From positions 141,909-205,908 of the IMG/VR virus record IMGVR_UViG_3300046660_000219: a stretch of DNA of 64,000 bases. One strand, given 5' to 3'. Shown in pieces: positions 11,259 to 50,955 of this stretch. Both the position numbers and the translations under genes were made by a program. Every line of letters begins with the position of its first letter. Positions within the stretch are counted from its first letter, which is position 1. The notes below the pieces were generated by a model that was given only the letters and a program-made list of their open reading frames with translations, did not search any database and was not told the DNA's origin.

Positions 11259-11753
11259 CTACTCCAACCAGACGACCGCCATGGTCTCTAGCTGGTCGTA
11301 ACGGGTGTACGGTTCAAGCAACGTCGGATCGAGCACTTGCCCGCGTTCGACGTAGACAAAATGGCTCCCGCTCTGACTGCGTTTACGCAGGCTAGGAACG
11401 AGGTGAATGGCGTTGCGGTGGGTGACACGATCGCGCGTCATCGCGCCCATGTATTGCGGCGCTAGCTTTTCTGGGTGGTGGTAGCGCGGATTATGACCAA
11501 GACGACGCAACAACGTGATCAGTTCTAGAAAGGTAAGCCCATCTTCGTAATACTGAAACGCCATCCCGGCGGCGTACACGTCGTCGTAATCATCACCGGT
11601 TAGCATCGTCACGCAGCACGCCCAGCAATCAGCCGCCTCGGCTTGAAACTGTAGCGGTGGCAAGTTCAGGTAGCGATCGAAGCTATCGCCCATGACGGCG
11701 TGGATCGCAGTTACCGGTTCAGGCCACTTGAAATTAGACAGCATGGCGTTCAT
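11259..11753 (-). CDS. Papain-fold cysteine peptidase (C39-like)
   Basis: Q...DCWACC (catalytic Cys), SHFVYV (His), VLDP (Asp) in C39 order. Confidence 0.65.
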   Translation of the reverse strand: MNAMLSNFKWPEPVTAIHAVMGDSFDRYLNLPPLQFQAEAADCWACCVTMLTGDDYDDVYAAGMAFQYYEDGLTFLELITLLRRLGHNPRYHHPEKLAPQYMGAMTRDRVTHRNAIHLVPSLRKRSQSGSHFVYVERGQVLDPTLLEPYTRYDQLETMAVVWLE

Positions 11754-11761
11754 GTACCGAC

Positions 11762-11959
11762 CTACAGTTTTGGTTGTTGTCCGAAAGGGTCACGCCAAAT
11801 GTACGGGTCACTACTGTCTAGCCGGATGGCGGCGATAACAGCAACGGCGGTGTCCACGCACTCGTCACAAATCAGCGCATTGACGGGCGCAGCCAGCAAG
11901 GTCTTAACCTCGTAGTCCGCCTTGCCACAGAAAGAACAGTAGTTTACTTGCCTGTTCAT
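11762..11959 (-). CDS. Stand-alone ClpX C4-type zinc-binding domain
   Basis: YCSFCGK...VKTLLAAP..ALICDECV, the ClpX N-domain pattern, with no AAA+ module. Confidence 0.88.
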   Translation of the reverse strand: MNRQVNYCSFCGKADYEVKTLLAAPVNALICDECVDTAVAVIAAIRLDSSDPYIWRDPFGQQPKL

Positions 11960-12529
11960 GGTTTACCTTTTCTACGACGACGCATCTTGCGGATAGCAGC
12001 GTGTTCCAGGCGTTGGGCCGCTTTGAGCTTATCGTTATCGACGAGCTTCTGTATAAGCGCGCGTTTTAGCGGGCTAATCTCGATGTACAAACGCCTGTCG
12101 GTATCTACGTCACGCACCTCTAGGAGGGGAACTTTTCGCACGGGAATACCCGCTGCGCAGAACGGACAATCGCAGCCTACCGTAACGCTATGCATCACCA
12201 TGCTGATACCTTTATGCTTCGATAGTCAGCGTCAAAGAGATCCGATCAGCATCGACGCCGATGATTTGCGCAAGCTTCTCGCGCGTCTCATCGCAAATGG
12301 TTTGCATCGTCTTCGGCTCGATCGCCGCGACAAGCTCGACGGCGCGCTCCGTAGGTGTCTTAGTGTTCGGGACGTCAGTGTCGTTCTCAATAGACATTGA
12401 AGCTACCTTTCTTTGCTTATCTTGCGCGATGACGTTGGGGCACTCGCTATAATCATAACCACCGTCACAGCGCAAAAAACATTCGACAAAGCCACATGAA
12501 TTCGGCTCGTGTATAAATGGAAGTTGCAT

Positions 12530-12814
12530 TTAGAGCAAGCGCAGTCCGTACACTCCATCTTCTTGATGGAAACAGGGACCGTGTACCCACGCATCTACGA
12601 GCGTGCCGTCGTACATGTACAGAGCAACAAAACGATAAGGTGAATTCAAACGTTGTTCCGTAGCTAGTGCCACAGTGGCTGTAAAAATCTTGCGGGCTTC
12701 GCTTATAGTCGGATATGAGCTTTCGCCGCTACCATGAGCCATAATCGTTACAACGCGATGCTCGACAGCACCCTCTTCGGGACGTTTAGCCGGTTGGCCG
12801 GGATTGTCACACAT
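12530..12814 (-). CDS. Hypothetical protein
   Basis: AAAAGGTAC leader. Confidence 0.55.
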   Translation of the reverse strand: MCDNPGQPAKRPEEGAVEHRVVTIMAHGSGESSYPTISEARKIFTATVALATEQRLNSPYRFVALYMYDGTLVDAWVHGPCFHQEDGVYGLRLL

Positions 12815-12895: not shown

Positions 12896-13426
12896 TTAGC
12901 CGCCGCGCGCTTGCGTAACGGTAGTGATGGTCTTGTTCTCGTTGATCACAGCCGTCTGCGTCAGCTTGGTGTTGTTGCTGTCACGCAGCATCAGGCCGGT
13001 CGGCGCGCCGGCCTTCTTGAGGTGATCGCCGAGCGTCTTGCCAGTGGACAGCGTGGACGATCCAGCGAACGAACCCGAGAAGGTCACGGTCACGTCTTCC
13101 GTGGTAGCGACAGCCGGAACAGCGGCCGGAGCTTCTTCCGTACCGTTTTCCGGCGGTTGGGCTTCACCTTCCGCGACAGCTTCCGTTTCCGCCGTCTGTT
13201 CCGTGACGGGTTCCTCGGCGGCGACCGTTGCGGTTTCAGCGGCCGGAGCTTCTTCCGTGGTGGCTTCTTCCGACGCGGCGGCCACTTCTTCGGCGACCGG
13301 CTCTTCGGCGACGGGTGCGGCCGATTCTTGAGCCGACGTTTCGGCGCTCGTTTCGTTGGTGGCGGCGTTGGTCTCAGCGGTGTTTTCCGCCGCGCCGTTT
13401 TCCGGCGTTTCGTTTTGATCGGTCAT
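12896..13426 (-). CDS. Ubiquitin-like (beta-grasp) protein with a 110 aa acidic disordered N-terminal extension
   Basis: 66 aa C-terminal domain with beta-beta-alpha-beta pattern ending ARGG-stop; adjacent to ThiF/E1. Confidence 0.75.
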   Translation of the reverse strand: MTDQNETPENGAAENTAETNAATNETSAETSAQESAAPVAEEPVAEEVAAASEEATTEEAPAAETATVAAEEPVTEQTAETEAVAEGEAQPPENGTEEAPAAVPAVATTEDVTVTFSGSFAGSSTLSTGKTLGDHLKKAGAPTGLMLRDSNNTKLTQTAVINENKTITTVTQARGG

Positions 13427-13481
13427 GTGTAGTCCCTAGCTAGGTTGTTGTGTTGGTACGCTTACTATTAACGCAGCCGTC

Positions 13482-14201
13482 CTAAGCTGCGCGCAACACT
13501 GACGAAGGATATCGCTTCTTCAGTATCGTCCAGGCGGAGAGGTCAGCAATGACCTCGTTCGCTTGAAGCTTGTTGTTCAGGGCGTCCATGGCCAGACAAA
13601 TAGTAGTCTGGCTGGCGATCTGCGCCGTAGCCCCGATCGAAATGGTATTACCGCACGTGCCGATGTCGGCGGACGCTTCGGCGTCGTCGTACAGCATTTC
13701 ATAGTACGCGGCTTGTTCGCTCAAGTCAAACGGCCGGTAGGCGAAGCTCATAGCCGTGCGCCCGCTGGTCCTGGCGTCGTAGCCGACGCGGGTGTCGAAC
13801 ACCCATTCGACCTTGGGGTTAAGCTGACAGCCCTCTTGCGCGATCTGCTTACGGACCGTCATCGTGTCCACGCACATGAACACGAGATTGGCATAGACGC
13901 GCCCACCAAGATACCGTTTCTTGTGGCCAGCGATCTCGGTACCTGTGGCCTCATAAACGCGCTGGCGTAACGCATTCACCTTCAAGCGCTCAATATCATC
14001 AGGGCCATAAGGGTACTGGTTAGACAGGTTATGCGGTTCGACCACGTCGTCATCCCACACCGTGATGTTCTCCAGGCCCAGCTTAGCGAGACCCAGGACG
14101 ATGCTCGACCCAACAGCGCCCGCACCGATCACGAGGATCGACTTGTCGCTGAACTTGTGCGGATCGAATGCACTCAGGTGGCGTATCGTTTCAAGAGCCA
14201 T
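13482..14201 (-). CDS. ThiF/MoeB/E1-like adenylyltransferase
   Basis: ILVIGAGAVGS, WDDDVVEPHNLSNQ, LKVNAL, MCVDTMTVRK; candidate catalytic Cys in IGTCG; no CxxC pairs. Confidence 0.92.
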   Translation of the reverse strand: MALETIRHLSAFDPHKFSDKSILVIGAGAVGSSIVLGLAKLGLENITVWDDDVVEPHNLSNQYPYGPDDIERLKVNALRQRVYEATGTEIAGHKKRYLGGRVYANLVFMCVDTMTVRKQIAQEGCQLNPKVEWVFDTRVGYDARTSGRTAMSFAYRPFDLSEQAAYYEMLYDDAEASADIGTCGNTISIGATAQIASQTTICLAMDALNNKLQANEVIADLSAWTILKKRYPSSVLRAA

Positions 14202-14494
14202 TAGCGGCGGCCTTTCTTTGCGGGGTTACCATTCTTGCGCGGTTCCTCTTTTGCGACGAACCGGCGAGCAAGATTGGCGATGTGGGGATGCGCCAGGGAA
14301 TTATCTTCGAACTCCACGGCTAAGTCAAGCGACGCTAAATGCAGCAATTGCTGGACCTTAATCGGCAAGTCTTCGATCCGACTCAACTCGATAGGATGAT
14401 ACGAGCGATCGGAAATGCCAAGTTTGTCCGCCATGGCTCGCTGGGTTAAACCCAGCTCACCACGCAGTTCGAAAAGTGTATTGAAGCGATACAT
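14201..14494 (-). CDS. XRE-family HTH protein
   Basis: LRGELGLTQRAMADKLGISDRSYHPIE; its stop overlaps the E1 start (TAATG). Confidence 0.85.
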   Translation of the reverse strand: MYRFNTLFELRGELGLTQRAMADKLGISDRSYHPIELSRIEDLPIKVQQLLHLASLDLAVEFEDNSLAHPHIANLARRFVAKEEPRKNGNPAKKGRR

Positions 14495-14531
14495 CGGAAA
14501 TCTCCTTCGACGATGAAGCTACTGTTACTAA

Positions 14532-16334
14532 TCAATCCTCGTCATCTTCATCGTCGTCAATTTCTCCCTCGTCATCCTCCATATCGTCTTCTTCATCCGC
14601 ATCGTCTTCTTCATCCTCTTCAGCGGCGAAGTCACCGTTCTCCCAGGTGCGCGGCGTGCCAGCGTCAGCCACAGCCTCGTCTTGGAAGTTACGCAACAGG
14701 CTGTCAGGACCATCTTCACCGAAGGTTCCGATAAGATGCTGCCACACACTTATGTGTACCTTTTTCGGAGGTTCTTTGGAGTCCGGTAAGAGCGACCACT
14801 TTCCAATATGATCCGTGTCGAATGTACGGTAGTACTCCATGATCGCCAAGATCAGGTTATAGTAGTCATTGGTGCGGATCGCTGACTCGAACAATCGATC
14901 GAATGAACCAACGCAACTACCGTGTGGATTACGATAGTCCTTGTTCGGCGACGCGATGTTACGAACGCGTACCGAACCTTCCGTACTGATTTGGATCTCG
15001 AAACGTCCGCAATAGCGCTCCGTCCTATCACGCATCGAAATGCCCAGCATGTTCTTGGTGACGACGATCATGCGAGACGGAGTGAGAGTAAGTGTGTCGA
15101 TTTCACCCATACCTTTAAGACGCTCGATAGATTCGCGCATGGCTCTTACGGTGTCGTCAGCCATGAGATTATAAGCACGTTCTGCGCCCTGGAATTTAGA
15201 GACCGCCTCTAGCATTTTCTTACGCAGCTTCTCCAATTCGTTCTGCGATTCCGCGTAGGTTGTTACGACGGATTTCGCGACGACTGCACCCCACCTAGCC
15301 AGAGACTCTTCCGACACGCCATCATTGGCTTCTAGCCGCTTCTCCAGCGCTAGTAGGAATGCGGCGTGGTTGGGGAACGTCGTGAAAATGACGGGCTTAT
15401 TATTACCCTGCACGGGCACGACAATGTAACCATGACGGAATGGTTCGCCATTAGCCAAGCGCACAGGAGGTGCGGCGTCGCGCGTGACCACGGCATCGAC
15501 GCTGGTGTTGCTTAATTTCGGTCGCGAAATAGTACGACGTGGTGTCACACCCTGCGCTTTAGGATCGGGTCGTTCATCTGACGGATCATAGACCAACGGA
15601 CGAAAACGCTCGCTAGCTTCTTGCCGCATGGCCGCGTGAAGATGCGGCGTCATGTGGTTGTCGAAGTGAATGCCTTCGAACACCACACCGTGAATGTACG
15701 TCGGATATGACGTGGAGCCGATGAAATCGGCATTGAACCGGTTTTCCCAGTTGAGAGTTTCACCACGATTAAAGGTATCACGCATCAATACCGGCATCAT
15801 GTAGCCGAATACCGTCAGACGCGTGGAATAACTACTCTTACGATCGCTCGTGCCCCAGTAAGAATAGTTGGCAAAAACCGTACCACCAGGGAGACGATTA
15901 CGCCACGACGCACGTAACGGGTCCGTGCCGCTGCGGACGTAGGACGAAGTATGCGGTGCTTGGTTGCGCGGCACGTCGTAGCCGTCATTGCCGTCAAGCG
16001 CCAGCACTTCCGTAAGCAAGGGTGACGGATTGATCACCGGGCATTCCGTCCGCTTAACCCAACCGTGAACCTGCGCCAGAGCCGGGATAAGGTAACGACG
16101 CTTCTCTGGCATTTCGTACGCATAGATCGGCAGCGTAGTCGTCGCTTGTAGTTGTTCCATCGTAAGCATGTTGGTAATGCGCGGATGGAACGGTGTGAAG
16201 GCCGGTGCGGGAAGGGTTTTGGCCTTCGTACCCTTCTTCGTGGTTGGATCCGTCTTAAGGTCAGCTTTAGAGAACTTGGCGCTAGCGCCTCCCACGGAAG
16301 GGACAGCTTTCAGGTAGGGGTTTGAACGAGCCAT
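14532..16334 (-). CDS. Multidomain protein with coiled coil, putative E2-like C-terminal domain and acidic tail (paralog B)
   Basis: RYCGRFEIQI...NPHGSCVGSF...MEYYR; paralogous to 16365..18134. Confidence 0.6.
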   Translation of the reverse strand: MARSNPYLKAVPSVGGASAKFSKADLKTDPTTKKGTKAKTLPAPAFTPFHPRITNMLTMEQLQATTTLPIYAYEMPEKRRYLIPALAQVHGWVKRTECPVINPSPLLTEVLALDGNDGYDVPRNQAPHTSSYVRSGTDPLRASWRNRLPGGTVFANYSYWGTSDRKSSYSTRLTVFGYMMPVLMRDTFNRGETLNWENRFNADFIGSTSYPTYIHGVVFEGIHFDNHMTPHLHAAMRQEASERFRPLVYDPSDERPDPKAQGVTPRRTISRPKLSNTSVDAVVTRDAAPPVRLANGEPFRHGYIVVPVQGNNKPVIFTTFPNHAAFLLALEKRLEANDGVSEESLARWGAVVAKSVVTTYAESQNELEKLRKKMLEAVSKFQGAERAYNLMADDTVRAMRESIERLKGMGEIDTLTLTPSRMIVVTKNMLGISMRDRTERYCGRFEIQISTEGSVRVRNIASPNKDYRNPHGSCVGSFDRLFESAIRTNDYYNLILAIMEYYRTFDTDHIGKWSLLPDSKEPPKKVHISVWQHLIGTFGEDGPDSLLRNFQDEAVADAGTPRTWENGDFAAEEDEEDDADEEDDMEDDEGEIDDDEDDED

Positions 16335-47997: not shown

Positions 47998-49536
47998 TTA
48001 CGCGGCGGCGTTTCGTTGCACAATATGCCAATCCGGCTGACCATAGGTCAACGAATTGGGTGCGAAAGCTTTTTGGAAATCGTAGAGAACGAAAGCGTCG
48101 TCGTTCGCTGCCGTGCTGGTCGCCGCCGCGAAACTTAGGCCGTCAACCGTCCGATAGCAGTTAGCTGCGTTGTTCACATCGGCGAAACGATCGAACACAG
48201 TCTTACAGTAACCCTTGAACGACTTCTTGGTGCCGTCGTCGGTCTTGGGGTCTTTGAACAGCGCGCACTCGACGCCGTTAATGGTAGCGCCCGTGGCTTT
48301 CATTGCAAAACCCCAGGTGTCGCGGGTGTTGCACTGATAGGTGTACGACCCGATACCCAGTACGACGTTGTTCGACGCGAAACCCTTCGCTTCCAAGCGA
48401 ACGAAGATTTGTTCAGCGCGCGGCATGGTGATCGAGTCGCCGTAGATCAGGCCGATGTGCGAGTCGAGTTCTTCGTACCCTTTCGAATTGGTGGTCGTGC
48501 CGAACACTTCCGCAAGGAGTTCAACAGCACCCTTGAACGCAGGCGAACCGGGCTCGGCGTTCGGATCACCGCAGATGATATCGACAGGGTCGCCGCTGTC
48601 AGGACGGATCACCAGCTTACCGTTACGCGCCATGATCTTGCCCTTCAAGCGTGGCAAGATATCGGTCAACACGTTCCAGAAGTCCCAGGTGTCCGAGACG
48701 ATCGAGATGATGCCTTCTGGGTAAATGGTAAGTAGACGATCATACGTCTCGAATTCCGTGGACGAACCACCAGCGCACATGACGCTGTGTTCCGTGGCCG
48801 GGACCGTTCCGTACTGCGACATGTCGAAACCGGTGTACAGTTGTTCAGCGGCGAACAGTGCGGGAATGGTATCCGTGCCGTTGAAGAACAACAGATGGCC
48901 GATGTTGTAGACCATGGCCATCTCCGAACCGCCCATCATGCCGCGCATAGAAAAGTCATGGCATTGGAAGGGAACGAAGCTGCGATCGTTACAGGTTAGA
49001 TCCGCCCAATGGTCGCAGAGCTTGCGGTAGTTGCGAGCAATGGTAGCCATGGTTTGCGAGCCCCACATGAGGTTCGACAGTTCGGTCTCGACGTAGTTGG
49101 TCAACCACGCGAAGTCGTCATGCGTGTTGAAGATGGTGAAGTGCACGACGCCGGTTCGCGTTACCGTTCCTTCGGGAAGGTGAAGGACGTTCAGCGGCAG
49201 ATAGCCCAACGTGTGCAGGGCTTCAACATGCGACAGGTCGGGATTGTCTTGCTTATAGTACGCCTTGTAGAAAGCGTACATTTCTTGCATGACCTCGACG
49301 TTAGGGCGTGCGAACCATTTCGCGAACTCTTCCACGATCGTGCGCGCAGCGTACGAGAAGCCGAAGAACACGACTTCCGGTTCTTGCTGCCAGAGTTGCC
49401 GGTTAGTGAGACGCGCGATCTTGTCGCTACGCGGCGTCCACGTGGACAGCAGTCGGGTCATTCCAGTAGGGAATTGAAACTTGTGTTGACCCTTGTAGCC
49501 GTCAGCCAGCAGCATAGCCGGAATGAAGAATTGCAT
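47998..49536 (-). CDS. Nicotinamide phosphoribosyltransferase-family enzyme (NadV-like; likely NARP1 Namat)
   Basis: ADGYKGQH, CHDFSMRG, VPATEHSVMC, SIVSDTWD, VIRPDSGDP, LIYGDSIT, KDPKTD.GTKKS. Confidence 0.93.
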   Translation of the reverse strand: MQFFIPAMLLADGYKGQHKFQFPTGMTRLLSTWTPRSDKIARLTNRQLWQQEPEVVFFGFSYAARTIVEEFAKWFARPNVEVMQEMYAFYKAYYKQDNPDLSHVEALHTLGYLPLNVLHLPEGTVTRTGVVHFTIFNTHDDFAWLTNYVETELSNLMWGSQTMATIARNYRKLCDHWADLTCNDRSFVPFQCHDFSMRGMMGGSEMAMVYNIGHLLFFNGTDTIPALFAAEQLYTGFDMSQYGTVPATEHSVMCAGGSSTEFETYDRLLTIYPEGIISIVSDTWDFWNVLTDILPRLKGKIMARNGKLVIRPDSGDPVDIICGDPNAEPGSPAFKGAVELLAEVFGTTTNSKGYEELDSHIGLIYGDSITMPRAEQIFVRLEAKGFASNNVVLGIGSYTYQCNTRDTWGFAMKATGATINGVECALFKDPKTDDGTKKSFKGYCKTVFDRFADVNNAANCYRTVDGLSFAAATSTAANDDAFVLYDFQKAFAPNSLTYGQPDWHIVQRNAAA

Positions 49537-49577: not shown

Positions 49578-50477
49578 TTATTGATTGCTGTAATCGAACA
49601 GCGACAGCACTTCAGTATAATGCTTCAGCAGCTCGTCTTTGCCTTGTGAGAAGAGGCCATGCGTGACGTAGAGCCGCAGGTTGTAGAAAGTGTACGTCGA
49701 GCGTAACAGCTCGGCGATGCTGACAAACGTTCGTCCGCCGTCGCACAGATCATCGATGACCCAGAACGATGCGCCCGACGGTTGGATATCTACCGTTACG
49801 CCATCCGGCGTTTGCGCCGAAACGATCTTGTGGCCAACGATACGCCCTTCAAGGTCGCGCATCTTATCAGCGTATATGATCCCCGTGCCGTAGTGCTTGG
49901 AGAAGGCTTCGGCGCGGGCCTTAGCGCCTTCATCCACGGCCACCACGAAGTCGCGCGACGATGGCTGGTAACCGTTCTCGCGTTCCATCGTCGCGATGAA
50001 ACAATCTAACGACGACATAACAGTAAGTGAAGACAGCTCAACGCCGTCATGGCCGTCCGTCGACTTAATTGCATTATGCAACACTTTTACGAATACATCG
50101 CTGTGTGGGTCATACACAACAATGTTCCAAAAAACAGTATGCAGCAGAAGTTTTGCCGTAACATCCGCCGCATTAACTTCACCGGGCTTCTTCTGTTTAT
50201 CCGCACGTTGGTCGGGAAACGTTTGGATAACTAGGGTGTGACCTTTCCAGCCGCCGACGTAGTGGGACGGAGGAAGTAGAGCGCCGATCTGAAACAACGC
50301 AAAGACCGCCTGCGGAAGGGTAGTTTTCATTGTTACCGTTATTTCATTAACACTAAACGGTGCGCGGAAGGCAAACGAGCCATCCGGATATTGATCGACG
50401 TCCAGGGCGACAGGCGCACCAGAGACCGTTTCGTGCATCGTGAACCACGTGCGCGCGTCGGGATTGTTGATCGGCAT
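49578..50477 (-). CDS. Ribose-phosphate pyrophosphokinase-family enzyme (likely NARP1 Adps)
   Basis: YPDG, QRADK, YDPHS, VDEGA, KMRD, VIDDLCDGGRTF, LYVTHGLFS. Confidence 0.9.
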   Translation of the reverse strand: MPINNPDARTWFTMHETVSGAPVALDVDQYPDGSFAFRAPFSVNEITVTMKTTLPQAVFALFQIGALLPPSHYVGGWKGHTLVIQTFPDQRADKQKKPGEVNAADVTAKLLLHTVFWNIVVYDPHSDVFVKVLHNAIKSTDGHDGVELSSLTVMSSLDCFIATMERENGYQPSSRDFVVAVDEGAKARAEAFSKHYGTGIIYADKMRDLEGRIVGHKIVSAQTPDGVTVDIQPSGASFWVIDDLCDGGRTFVSIAELLRSTYTFYNLRLYVTHGLFSQGKDELLKHYTEVLSLFDYSNQ

Positions 50478-50955
50478 GGTGTATTGAACCTCAGTGAAGG
50501 GTTGCGCCAATGGCGGCAACGGCGAAAAAGGTAGCTGGTCCCGCAGCGGCTATCATAAAGACTAAATAGAAGGCGCTGAAGGCCCACGGGCTCATCGTAC
50601 TGATATACTTGTCGCACTTGCACGCCACAACCATCGACAGATACGACCACAGAATTGTGGCCACGGTAAATCCAAAGCAAGGCCAATTCATGGTAGCTAC
50701 CTTAATTGGTGCAGTAGACTTGCACGTGGCGTAGATGGCGATCGAGAAGAATACTAGCTAGCGTACCGCGCTGTGCGGCGCTTTCCGCATCAGGTAACGC
50801 GCGTTTAGCCGCGTTACTCACAGGACCACGCGATTTAGTAAGGCTGCGCAATTTCTCGATAGTGATAGTTTCCGGACCCTTCATCGAAGTTCTCCATAAT
50901 AGTAAGATGGTGGCGAGGCCGGTAGGTACCAAAACCTACCGGCCGAACGACGACC

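What the first reader, a model, noticed from the sequence alone, without database searches (positions are those of the whole stretch)
11762..11959. Stand-alone ClpX zinc-binding domain next to the Ubl operon
This 65 aa protein reproduces the ClpX N-terminal C4 domain with no ATPase. Established: this domain dimerises and docks adaptors and substrates such as SspB, and Caulobacter adaptor-dependent ClpXP proteolysis needs it. Inference: a decoy that titrates adaptors or heterodimerises with host ClpX to rewire proteolysis. Its location under 1 kb from the Ubl gene hints at a tagging-to-protease link.
Basis: partly seen in the sequence, partly recalled or inferred. Interest (0 to 1): 0.7.

Follow-up and report, generated by a model that had tools for sequence, protein, structure and literature searches.

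The report
Orphan ClpX zinc finger in jumbo phage
A 206-kb rhizosphere phage carries a 65-residue protein that is only the zinc-binding "docking" domain of the bacterial unfoldase ClpX, with no motor. It belongs to a common but untested class of phage proteins that may interfere with host protein degradation, and its position beside a ubiquitin-like gene set appears to be coincidence.

Summary
Window 11762-11959 (-) is a 65-aa ORF that matches Pfam zf-C4_ClpX (E 2.5e-13, 50 bits, cut-off 27) and the E. coli ClpX zinc-binding domain (ZBD) in the PDB (E 1e-8). All four Cys are present. The phage has no ClpX ATPase, ClpP or ClpS. The neighbouring module is also real: a ThiF-type E1, a beta-grasp protein ending in GG, and a C39-like cysteine peptidase.

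The proposed tagging-to-protease link is not supported. None of 47 viral records with a stand-alone ZBD has a ThiF E1. None of 15 viral E1 loci has a ZBD nearby. The one relative with the same E1/Ubl module lacks the ZBD and the three small genes beside it.

Stand-alone ClpX-type zinc fingers are common in phages (48 IMG/VR loci, four PHROGs) and have no recurrent gene partner. The new detail is a C-terminal tail, DPYxWxDP, shared only with Caulobacter phage Cr30 and one metagenomic protein.

The best reading is a host-directed ZBD dimer that competes for clients of the ClpX N-domain. It is plausible, because the F16/I46 patch is kept, but it is untested. This is a new member of a known, uncharacterised kind.

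The parts
11762..11959 (-). Gene for the 65-aa stand-alone ClpX-type zinc-binding domain protein
   Evidence: ORF. Pfam PF06689 at E 2.5e-13. PDB ClpX ZBD at E 1e-8. PHROGs 12435, 6797, 5259 and 20296.
11834..11941 (-). ZBD core, residues 7-42. Zinc knuckles are C8/C11 (codons 11936-11938 and 11927-11929) and C31/C34 (11867-11869 and 11858-11860). F10 and V41 are equivalent to E. coli F16 and I46.
   Evidence: Pfam and PDB alignments. Patch residues are from PMC7804408.
11786..11809 (-). C-terminal tail motif DPYIWRDP (residues 51-58). The consensus DPYxWxDP is shared with the Cr30 ORF and with P0064.
   Evidence: Alignments A1 and A2. Absent from the other short ZBDs examined. Pattern scans.
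11965..11970 (-). Shine-Dalgarno-like AAAGGT, 6 nt before the ATG
   Evidence: Read from the sequence.
11956..12201 (-). 81-aa ORF of unknown function. Its stop overlaps the ZBD start as ATGA, which suggests translational coupling.
   Evidence: No family or Atlas lead. Absent from relative G001.
12212..12814 (-). Two small ORFs (105 aa and 94 aa) of unknown function. With the 81-aa ORF and the ZBD they form a variable cassette between the Ubl and the peptidase.
   Evidence: No family hits. No homologues in the +-7-kb locus around the relative's E1. The 105-aa ORF also has no match in the whole G001 record.
11259..11753 (-). 164-aa C39-like papain-fold cysteine peptidase, starting 8 nt downstream of the ZBD. 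It belongs to the neighbouring module and is not shown to partner the ZBD.
   Evidence: Weak Pfam Peptidase_C39 match, E 0.042. Cys, His and Asp motifs conserved with the L002 homologue. Atlas structural matches to Peptidase_C39 clusters at TM 0.57-0.65.
12896..13426 (-). 176-aa Ubl: an acidic, disordered N-terminal part of about 105 aa followed by a beta-grasp domain ending in GG
   Evidence: Alignments A4 and A5. AF2 pLDDT 86.6. Foldseek matches to ubiquitin, SUMO and NEDD8 at prob 1.00.
13482..14201 (-). 239-aa ThiF-family adenylyltransferase (E1-like)
   Evidence: Pfam ThiF at E 8e-19. NCBIfam ThiF/MoeB/Cap2-type hits, all below their cut-offs. PADLOC E1-E2 partial hits.
14201..16334 (-). 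97-aa HTH protein (14201-14494) and a 600-aa protein with a poly-Asp/Glu tail (14532-16334), upstream of the E1. The 600-aa protein is conserved with E1/Ubl in the relative.

Best explanation
The gene encodes a genuine ClpX-type C4 zinc-binding domain with no ATPase, followed by a short conserved aromatic tail (DPYIWRDP). It is an independently mobile phage accessory gene, not a conserved part of the adjacent E1/Ubl module. The most likely mechanism is as follows. The protein folds around one zinc ion and, like the ClpX N-domain, forms a dimer that displays the hydrophobic client-binding patch. The phage has no Clp machinery, so the protein would act on the host. It would compete with the N-domain of host ClpX for N-domain-dependent substrates or adaptors (the lambda O, MuA, SspB, RssB and CpdR class), shielding chosen phage or host proteins from ClpXP. 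A less likely variant is that it pairs with a host ClpX N-domain. Shown here: the domain identity, the intact zinc ligands, the kept patch residues, the lack of any phage Clp partner, the lack of a conserved gene partner, and the conserved tail. Inferred: dimerisation, binding of ClpX clients, and any effect on proteolysis. The role of the tail is unknown; it may be a docking peptide.
For: Domain identity. Orphan status: the complete genome (direct terminal repeats, 100% complete) has one PF06689 match and no ClpP, AAA_2 or ClpS. The client-binding patch F16/I46 of E. coli ZBD binds lambda O, trigger factor, SspB and RssB (PMC7804408), and it is kept here as F10 and V41 (alignment). An isolated ZBD is a stable protein that binds the XB peptide at 35-82 nM (PMC12373786), so a free domain can capture adaptor tails. 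The co-fold with Caulobacter ClpX residues 1-62 scored ipSAE 0.41 in all three runs, against a best control of 0.00; partner pLDDT was 66 and contact agreement at least 78%. The tool rates this as weak support: the mark was reached by 51 of 78 solved complexes and 2 of 108 mismatches, but scores of 0.60 or under are more often wrong than right. Stand-alone ZBDs recur in phages: 48 IMG/VR loci under 300 aa, with diverse tails and no neighbour family shared by more than 3 loci. This pattern fits a protein that works on host machinery rather than within a phage-encoded complex. In Pseudomonas phage PP9W2 a 65-aa copy lies just downstream of the replication genes, among NinB/NinG-type genes. Lambda O, the replication initiator of phage lambda, is a ZBD-dependent ClpXP substrate. 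Six of the eight tail positions are invariant among three proteins that are only 48-49% identical overall. Precedents for partial Clp homologues or phage proteins that modulate Clp proteases: ClpC2 (PMC10030653), SPO1 gp53 (PMC6873191), and ClpS in jumbo phages (PMC7824862).
Against: No experiment exists for any stand-alone phage ZBD in the literature I could search. The domain is a promiscuous module. It occurs in 2-5x tandem arrays and is fused to TPR, TIR+WD40, LuxR, glyoxalase, Clp_N and ECF sigma factors, so ClpX-related function does not follow from the fold. The helix surface has diverged: the acidic DLCNDIIREE of E. coli is DTAVAVIAAI here, and the loop before the third Cys has one extra residue. 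Either change could alter dimerisation or client choice. The co-fold support is weak and may reflect memory of the solved homodimer. The host is unknown; TerL is only 33% identical to that of Rhizobium phages, and the source is a rhizosphere metagenome.
Confidence: 0.45

Rival explanations
1. It is a generic small zinc-ribbon interaction or dimerisation module with a target unrelated to ClpX. The ZBD fold would be a scaffold, and the DPYxWxDP tail or the Ala-rich helix would bind some other host or phage protein.
For: The domain is reused widely outside ClpX: in tandem arrays and fused to TPR, TIR-WD40, LuxR, ECF sigma and glyoxalase. The helix surface has diverged and the loop has a 1-residue insertion. 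The tail is conserved and has no counterpart in ClpX.
Against: The residues equivalent to the ClpX client patch are kept (F10, V41). The nearest solved and profile matches are all ClpX. No alternative partner is suggested by conserved gene neighbourhood.
Confidence: 0.3
2. It is an adaptor or rewiring factor. The phage ZBD would heterodimerise with a host ClpX N-domain, or dock on ClpX through its tail, and so redirect ClpXP towards new substrates instead of blocking it.
For: The heterodimer co-fold scored 0.41 against 0.00 for the controls (weak). The layout of a dimeric body plus a short conserved C-terminal tail resembles SspB, which has a dimer body and an XB tail that docks on the ZBD (established knowledge; PMC12373786).
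Against: By my recollection of Wojtyra et al. 2003 (not held in the library), the ClpX ZBD homodimer is very stable, so subunit exchange would be slow. The tail does not resemble known XB or other ClpX-docking motifs. The co-fold cannot distinguish heterodimer from homodimer preference.
Confidence: 0.12
3. It is a component of the neighbouring Ubl system. The ZBD would recognise the Ubl or Ubl-tagged proteins and couple them to host ClpXP, or it would regulate the C39-like peptidase.
For: In this genome it lies between the Ubl and the C39-like peptidase, on the same strand with short gaps (8 nt to the peptidase). In eukaryotes small zinc fingers often act as ubiquitin receptors (general knowledge).
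Against: None of 47 viral records with a stand-alone ZBD has a ThiF E1. None of 72 ZBD loci has a homologue of any operon protein within 5 kb. None of 15 viral E1 loci has a ZBD within 7 kb. The relative that keeps p600, E1, Ubl and the peptidase lacks the ZBD and the neighbouring small ORFs. The two other carriers of the tail motif (Cr30 and P0064) have no E1 or Ubl nearby.
Confidence: 0.07
4. It is a decaying remnant of a phage-borne clpX gene and has no function.
For: Some jumbo phages encode full-length ClpX (PMC7824862). About 19 of the 72 viral ZBD loci are full-length ClpX genes.
Against: There is no AAA+ remnant downstream or anywhere in the genome. The frame is intact, with an RBS and a coupled start. 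All four Cys are kept. The non-ClpX tail is conserved in unrelated phages.
Confidence: 0.02

Closest known systems
[quoted passage not shown]
   Same: Same Pfam family, same C4 zinc ligands, and the CSFCGK and ICDEC knuckles. About 50% identity over 40 residues. Predicted beta-hairpin plus helix. The F16/I46-equivalent patch residues are kept.
   Different: No linker or AAA+ module. One extra residue between the knuckles. The helix is Ala/Val-rich instead of acidic. It has its own DPYxWxDP tail.
Stand-alone 'ClpX C4-type zinc finger' proteins of phages (PHROGs 12435, 6797, 5259, 20296; for example Pseudomonas phage PP9W2 gp081; the Caulobacter phage Cr30 ORF at L003:3995-4183)
   Same: Same architecture: a ZBD alone, 53-180 aa, in phage or prophage accessory regions and without a Clp ATPase. 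Cr30 and P0064 also share the tail motif.
   Different: At most 62% identical to any protein in 1.84 billion cluster representatives. Only this copy lies beside an E1/Ubl module. None of these proteins has a tested function.
Mycobacterial ClpC2, a partial homologue of ClpC1 (PMC10030653)
   Same: By analogy only. It is a free-standing partial copy of a Clp unfoldase that binds a ligand of the full-length enzyme (the antibiotic cyclomarin A) and so protects ClpC1-dependent degradation.
   Different: A different domain family and a different unfoldase. It is host-encoded, and it protects against an antibiotic rather than serving a phage.
Phage-encoded modulators of Clp proteases: SPO1 gp53, an adaptor-like protein for ClpCP (PMC6873191), and ClpS or ClpP encoded by jumbo phages (PMC7824862)
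   Same: They show that phages encode small proteins that redirect or block host Clp proteolysis.
   Different: Unrelated folds. gp53 binds ClpC. None of them is a copy of the unfoldase's own docking domain.

Membership tests
zf-C4_ClpX (Pfam PF06689), the ClpX-type zinc-binding domain | Profile match above the curated gathering score | tested here: met
   50.1 bits against a cut-off of 27, E 2.5e-13, profile positions 2-37 of 39. The same result came from the genome search.
zf-C4_ClpX (Pfam PF06689), the ClpX-type zinc-binding domain | Four Cys zinc ligands in two CxxC knuckles | tested here: met
   C8, C11, C31 and C34 align with the E. coli ligands. The spacing is 19 residues; canonical ClpX has 18, and 20 of the 119 stand-alone copies examined also have 19.
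zf-C4_ClpX (Pfam PF06689), the ClpX-type zinc-binding domain | Fold: a beta-hairpin zinc ribbon followed by a C-terminal helix, as in 1OVX and 2DS5 | tested here: met
   The AF2 model has E19-23, E26-30 and H32-47 (pLDDT 68). Its four best Foldseek PDB hits are ClpX ZBD structures (prob 0.80-0.91), but the E-values are weak at 0.03-0.09. Atlas structural matches reach TM 0.69-0.75 to ClpX and ZBD clusters.
zf-C4_ClpX (Pfam PF06689), the ClpX-type zinc-binding domain | Forms a stable dimer | tested here: inconclusive
   Only a heterodimer co-fold with Caulobacter ClpX residues 1-62 was run. It scored 0.41 against a best control of 0.00, which the tool rates as weak support and which may come from memory of the solved complex. 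The homodimer was not modelled.
zf-C4_ClpX (Pfam PF06689), the ClpX-type zinc-binding domain | Hydrophobic client-binding patch (E. coli F16 and I46) that binds lambda O, SspB, RssB and trigger factor | tested here: met
   The equivalent residues are F10 (identical) and V41 (conservative) (alignment; patch from PMC7804408). This is sequence-level evidence only; binding was not tested.
zf-C4_ClpX (Pfam PF06689), the ClpX-type zinc-binding domain | Binds zinc | not testable with these tools
   Needs metal analysis of purified protein.
ClpX unfoldase (NCBIfam TIGR00382 / NF003745) | AAA+ ATPase module with pore loops and a ClpP-docking IGF loop | tested here: not met
   The protein scores 26-33 bits against cut-offs of 359-371 and covers only model positions 3-45. 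The genome has no AAA_2 match. It is not a ClpX.
Component of the phage E1/Ubl module | Conserved co-occurrence or synteny with the E1 and the Ubl across genomes | tested here: not met
   0 of 47 ZBD-bearing viral records have ThiF. 0 of 72 ZBD loci have operon homologues within 5 kb. 0 of 15 E1 loci have a ZBD within 7 kb. Relative G001 has the module but no ZBD.
Clp decoy or anti-adaptor proteins (a functional class; ClpC2-like) | Binds ligands, adaptors or substrates of the full-length unfoldase and alters their fate | not testable with these tools
   Needs binding and degradation assays. The only support is indirect.

The most novel reading that the evidence does not exclude
The ZBD with its DPYxWxDP tail is a bridge between the phage's own ubiquitin-like tagging module and the host ClpXP protease. 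It would work either as a receptor for the GG-ended Ubl or its conjugates, or as a tail-docking adaptor. If so, this phage would run a miniature 'tag, recognise, degrade' pathway assembled from a host unfoldase domain.
Probability: 0.06. Interest if true: 0.85.

Novelty: new member of a known kind. Interest (0 to 1): 0.4.

Why it matters
ClpXP controls replication-initiator turnover (lambda O), transposase remodelling (MuA), stress sigma factors and, in alphaproteobacteria, the cell cycle. [quoted passage not shown] If phages routinely deploy free copies of that domain, they would form a widespread and unstudied class of small protease modulators. This scan alone found 48 such loci in IMG/VR, and four PHROG families exist. 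Such proteins could also serve as tools for blocking N-domain-dependent degradation. This particular copy adds a rare, conserved tail motif that could be tested. The more eye-catching idea, a link to the neighbouring Ubl system, fails the comparative test, so the finding should not be used as evidence for tag-to-protease coupling.

Tried and rejected
- The word-indexed homologue search with the single sequence returned only the query. The profile version returned 2,582 short ZBD proteins, many of them contig-end or frameshifted clpX fragments. None of the 16 examined has the tail.
- The search for related loci with the single protein found nothing. With alignment A2 it gave 72 loci.
- Megablast of the 8-kb region against phages gave no match.
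- Looking for a recurrent gene partner of stand-alone ZBDs (all-against-all comparison of neighbours) found no family shared by more than 3 loci.
- Fixed-gap DNA patterns for the second zinc knuckle plus the tail motif found only Cr30 in viral contigs and nothing in metagenome contigs.
- Promoter and terminator scans gave counts close to those of shuffled sequence, so operon boundaries are unresolved.
- Sequencing runs gave only the source rhizosphere metagenome and a trace of the same phage. There was no RNA and no relative.
- Literature searches for any characterised stand-alone or phage ClpX zinc finger returned nothing relevant. Wojtyra 2003 and two guessed identifiers for a Thibault 2006 PNAS paper that I recalled from memory are not held.
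- The truncated-clpX pseudogene idea was rejected.
- The 81-aa upstream ORF gave no lead in any library or in the Atlas.

Full report
**Context**

The window is the last 64 kb of a complete 205,908-bp IMG/VR virus record. The record has 127-bp direct terminal repeats and 53.8% G+C. The virus is a contractile-tailed jumbo phage with portal, sheath, baseplate and large terminase genes. Its TerL is only 33% identical to that of Rhizobium phages of about 193 kb. The source is a rhizosphere metagenome, where the phage has a word depth of about 321. The host is unknown. Almost every long ORF in the window lies on the minus strand.

**1. The observation**

Window 11762-11959 (-) is a 65-aa ORF with an ATG start. 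An AAGG(T) ribosome-binding motif lies 6 nt upstream. The ATG overlaps the stop codon of the preceding 81-aa ORF as ATGA.

- Residues 7-42 match Pfam zf-C4_ClpX at E 2.5e-13, 50.1 bits against a cut-off of 27.
- phmmer against the PDB returns the E. coli ClpX zinc-binding domain (ZBD; 2ds5, 2ds7, 1ovx) at E about 1e-8. The CSFCGK and ICDEC knuckles are identical.
- The single-sequence AF2 model (pLDDT 68) is a beta-hairpin followed by a helix. Its four best PDB matches are ClpX ZBD crystal structures, with prob 0.80-0.91 but weak E-values.
- The Atlas structure search gives TM 0.69-0.75 to ClpX and ZBD clusters.
- There is no ATPase. The next gene begins 8 nt downstream, and the genome has no AAA_2, ClpP or ClpS match.

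**2. The neighbourhood**

Reading along the minus strand, the gene order is:

| Coordinates | Product |
|---|---|
| 16334-14532 | 600-aa protein with a poly-Asp/Glu tail |
| 14494-14201 | 97-aa HTH protein |
| 14201-13482 | 239-aa ThiF-family E1 (Pfam E 8e-19) |
| 13426-12896 | 176-aa Ubl |
| 12814-11956 | three small ORFs of 94, 105 and 81 aa |
| 11959-11762 | the ZBD |
| 11753-11259 | 164-aa C39-like peptidase |
| 11223-10723 | 166-aa ORF with no family match |

The last 72 residues of the Ubl model as a beta-grasp (pLDDT 86.6). The model matches ubiquitin, SUMO and NEDD8 at prob 1.00, and the protein ends in GG followed directly by the stop codon. The peptidase has conserved Cys, His and Asp motifs and structural matches to Peptidase_C39 clusters. 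The 'Ubl operon' is therefore real, and the ZBD start lies 937 nt from the Ubl stop.

**3. Is the ZBD part of that module?**

Four tests say no.

- (a) The only relative with the same module is IMGVR_UViG_3300037313_000284 (140.8 kb, 68% complete; E1 57% identical). It keeps the large protein, the E1, the Ubl (GRGG end) and the C39-like peptidase, but in a different arrangement. It has no PF06689 match anywhere at E<=1. The 81- and 105-aa ORFs have no match in the whole record. The 94-aa ORF was sought only in the +-7-kb locus around the relative's E1 and has no homologue there.
- (b) None of the 72 viral loci with a ClpX-type zinc finger has a homologue of the E1, the Ubl, the peptidase or any other operon protein within 5 kb.
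- (c) None of 47 whole viral records with a stand-alone ZBD has a ThiF-family match. Twenty-two of these records are at least 90% complete.
- (d) None of 15 viral loci with a related E1 has a ZBD-like ORF within 7 kb.

The ZBD and its three small neighbours behave as a variable accessory cassette that happens to lie between the Ubl and the peptidase.

**4. What kind of protein it is**

Stand-alone ClpX-type zinc fingers are common.

- Four PHROG families match. One of them carries the misleading label 'protease'.
- tblastn finds copies in phages of Caulobacter, Pseudomonas, Agrobacterium, Sinorhizobium and Escherichia.
- Of the 72 IMG/VR loci, about 19 are full-length ClpX genes and 48 encode proteins shorter than 300 aa with diverse tails.
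- The exhaustive search of 1.84 billion cluster representatives gives 1,898 hits. None is more than 62% identical to this protein, and many are tandem arrays of 2-5 copies.
- The domain is also fused to TPR, TIR+WD40, LuxR, glyoxalase, Clp_N repeats and ECF sigma factors.
- The neighbours of stand-alone phage copies share no family in more than 3 loci.
- In Pseudomonas phage PP9W2 a 65-aa copy lies just downstream of the replication genes, among NinB/NinG-type genes.

I found no paper that characterises any of these proteins.

**5.

The C-terminal tail, DPYIWRDP, has a conserved consensus, DPYxWxDP. It is shared with a 62-aa ORF of the T4-like Caulobacter phage Cr30. That record annotates only a truncated 41-aa gp170. 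It is also shared with P0064, a 61-aa protein from a contig whose local gene order (a small upstream ORF, the ZBD, then a small downstream ORF) resembles that of Cr30. Six of the eight tail positions are invariant, although the three proteins are only 48-49% identical overall. The tail is absent from the 16 other short ZBDs I inspected and from the other 71 viral loci. Fixed-gap pattern scans found no further carrier. Neither Cr30 nor P0064 has an E1 or Ubl nearby. The function of the tail is unknown.

**6. Mechanism**

Established knowledge:
- The ClpX N-domain dimerises on its own and docks MuA, FtsZ and the adaptors SspB and RssB (PMC5415555).
- It is required for lambda O degradation. A hydrophobic patch that includes F16 and I46 binds lambda O, trigger factor, SspB and RssB (PMC7804408).
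- Caulobacter CpdR binds the same domain (PMC7804408).
- The isolated domain (ClpX residues 1-52) is a stable protein that binds the SspB XB peptide at 35-82 nM (PMC12373786).

In the phage protein the patch equivalents are F10 and V41. The rest of the helix is Ala/Val-rich instead of acidic, and the inter-knuckle loop is one residue longer.

A co-fold with Caulobacter ClpX residues 1-62 and two zinc ions scored ipSAE 0.41 in all three runs, against 0.00 for the best control. Partner pLDDT was 66 and contact agreement at least 78%. The tool rates this as weak support. The mark was reached by 51 of 78 solved complexes and 2 of 108 mismatches, but passes at 0.60 or under are more often wrong than right, and the score may reflect memory of the solved homodimer.

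The phage has no Clp machinery and the gene has no conserved phage partner. The explanation I favour, at about 0.45, is a host-directed ZBD dimer that competes with host ClpX for N-domain-dependent clients. The rivals are:
- a generic zinc module with a non-Clp target (0.30);
- an adaptor or heterodimer that rewires ClpX (0.12);
- a true Ubl-system component (0.07);
- a gene remnant (0.02).

**7. Comparison and novelty**

The protein is a member of the zf-C4_ClpX domain family by profile score, zinc ligands and fold. It is not a ClpX, because it lacks the AAA+ module. It belongs to a class of stand-alone phage ZBD proteins that is already annotated but functionally unexplored. The closest functional analogies are ClpC2, a free partial homologue of ClpC1 that binds the antibiotic cyclomarin A (PMC10030653); SPO1 gp53 (PMC6873191); and ClpS encoded by jumbo phages (PMC7824862).

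My verdict is a new member of a known kind, of moderate interest (0.4). The domain call is solid and the decoy idea is testable.

Noticed in passing
L003:3995-4183 (+) = NC_025422.1 about 81521-81709: Caulobacter phage Cr30 encodes a complete 62-aa ClpX-type ZBD with the same DPYxWxDP tail. The GenBank record annotates only a 41-aa gp170 that starts inside the domain, so the zinc finger is hidden in the annotation.
   Followed up: yes
window 12896-16334 (-), plus L002:4520-7185: The phage E1/Ubl module has three parts: a minimal 239-aa ThiF-type E1; a Ubl with an acidic, disordered N-terminal extension of about 105 aa and a beta-grasp ending in GG-stop; and a 491-600-aa protein with a poly-Asp/Glu tail whose gene is directly coupled to the E1 gene in the relative. 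No E2 or JAB domain was recognised. It is open whether this module conjugates proteins or carries sulfur in the ThiS/MoaD manner.
   Followed up: partly
window 11259-11753 (-); L002:1873-2433 (+): This C39-like papain-fold cysteine peptidase has the motifs DCWACC, SHFVYV and LDP. It lies near the E1/Ubl module in both phages. C39 peptidases cleave after Gly-Gly, so it is a candidate Ubl-processing or deconjugating enzyme. Similar stand-alone proteins form several mostly viral Atlas clusters.
   Followed up: partly
window 47998-49536 (-) and 49578-50519 (-): Adjacent genes for nicotinamide phosphoribosyltransferase (PHROG 448, E 2e-163) and ribose-phosphate pyrophosphokinase. Together they form an NAD-salvage pair, of a kind thought to counter NAD-depleting host defences.
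   Followed up: no
proteins P0002-P0150; P0035, P0108, P0022: ClpX-type zinc fingers occur as 2-5x tandem arrays and in unexpected fusions. Examples are TIR + WD40 + two ZBDs (1,155 aa), Clp_N repeats + two ZBDs with no ATPase (747 aa), TPR + five ZBDs, and LuxR-HTH + ZBD. The domain is a widely reused module whose roles outside ClpX appear to be unstudied.
   Followed up: partly
L004:2801-3198 (Pseudomonas phage PP9W2 gp080-gp081) and hits H14, H18: In Pseudomonas phage PP9W2 the 65-aa stand-alone ZBD gene starts at the stop of a small DksA/TraR-type zinc-finger gene, downstream of the replication genes. Two other Pseudomonas phage records (hits H14 and H18) also annotate a small zinc-finger gene next to the ZBD. 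This may be a recurring two-gene unit in that lineage.
   Followed up: no
window 11956-12814 (-): Three small ORFs (94, 105 and 81 aa) between the Ubl and the ZBD have no match in any library. None has a homologue around the relative's E1, and the 81- and 105-aa ORFs also have no match in the whole relative record. The 81-aa ORF has a CxCxxC cluster and a basic C-terminus, and it appears translationally coupled to the ZBD.
   Followed up: partly
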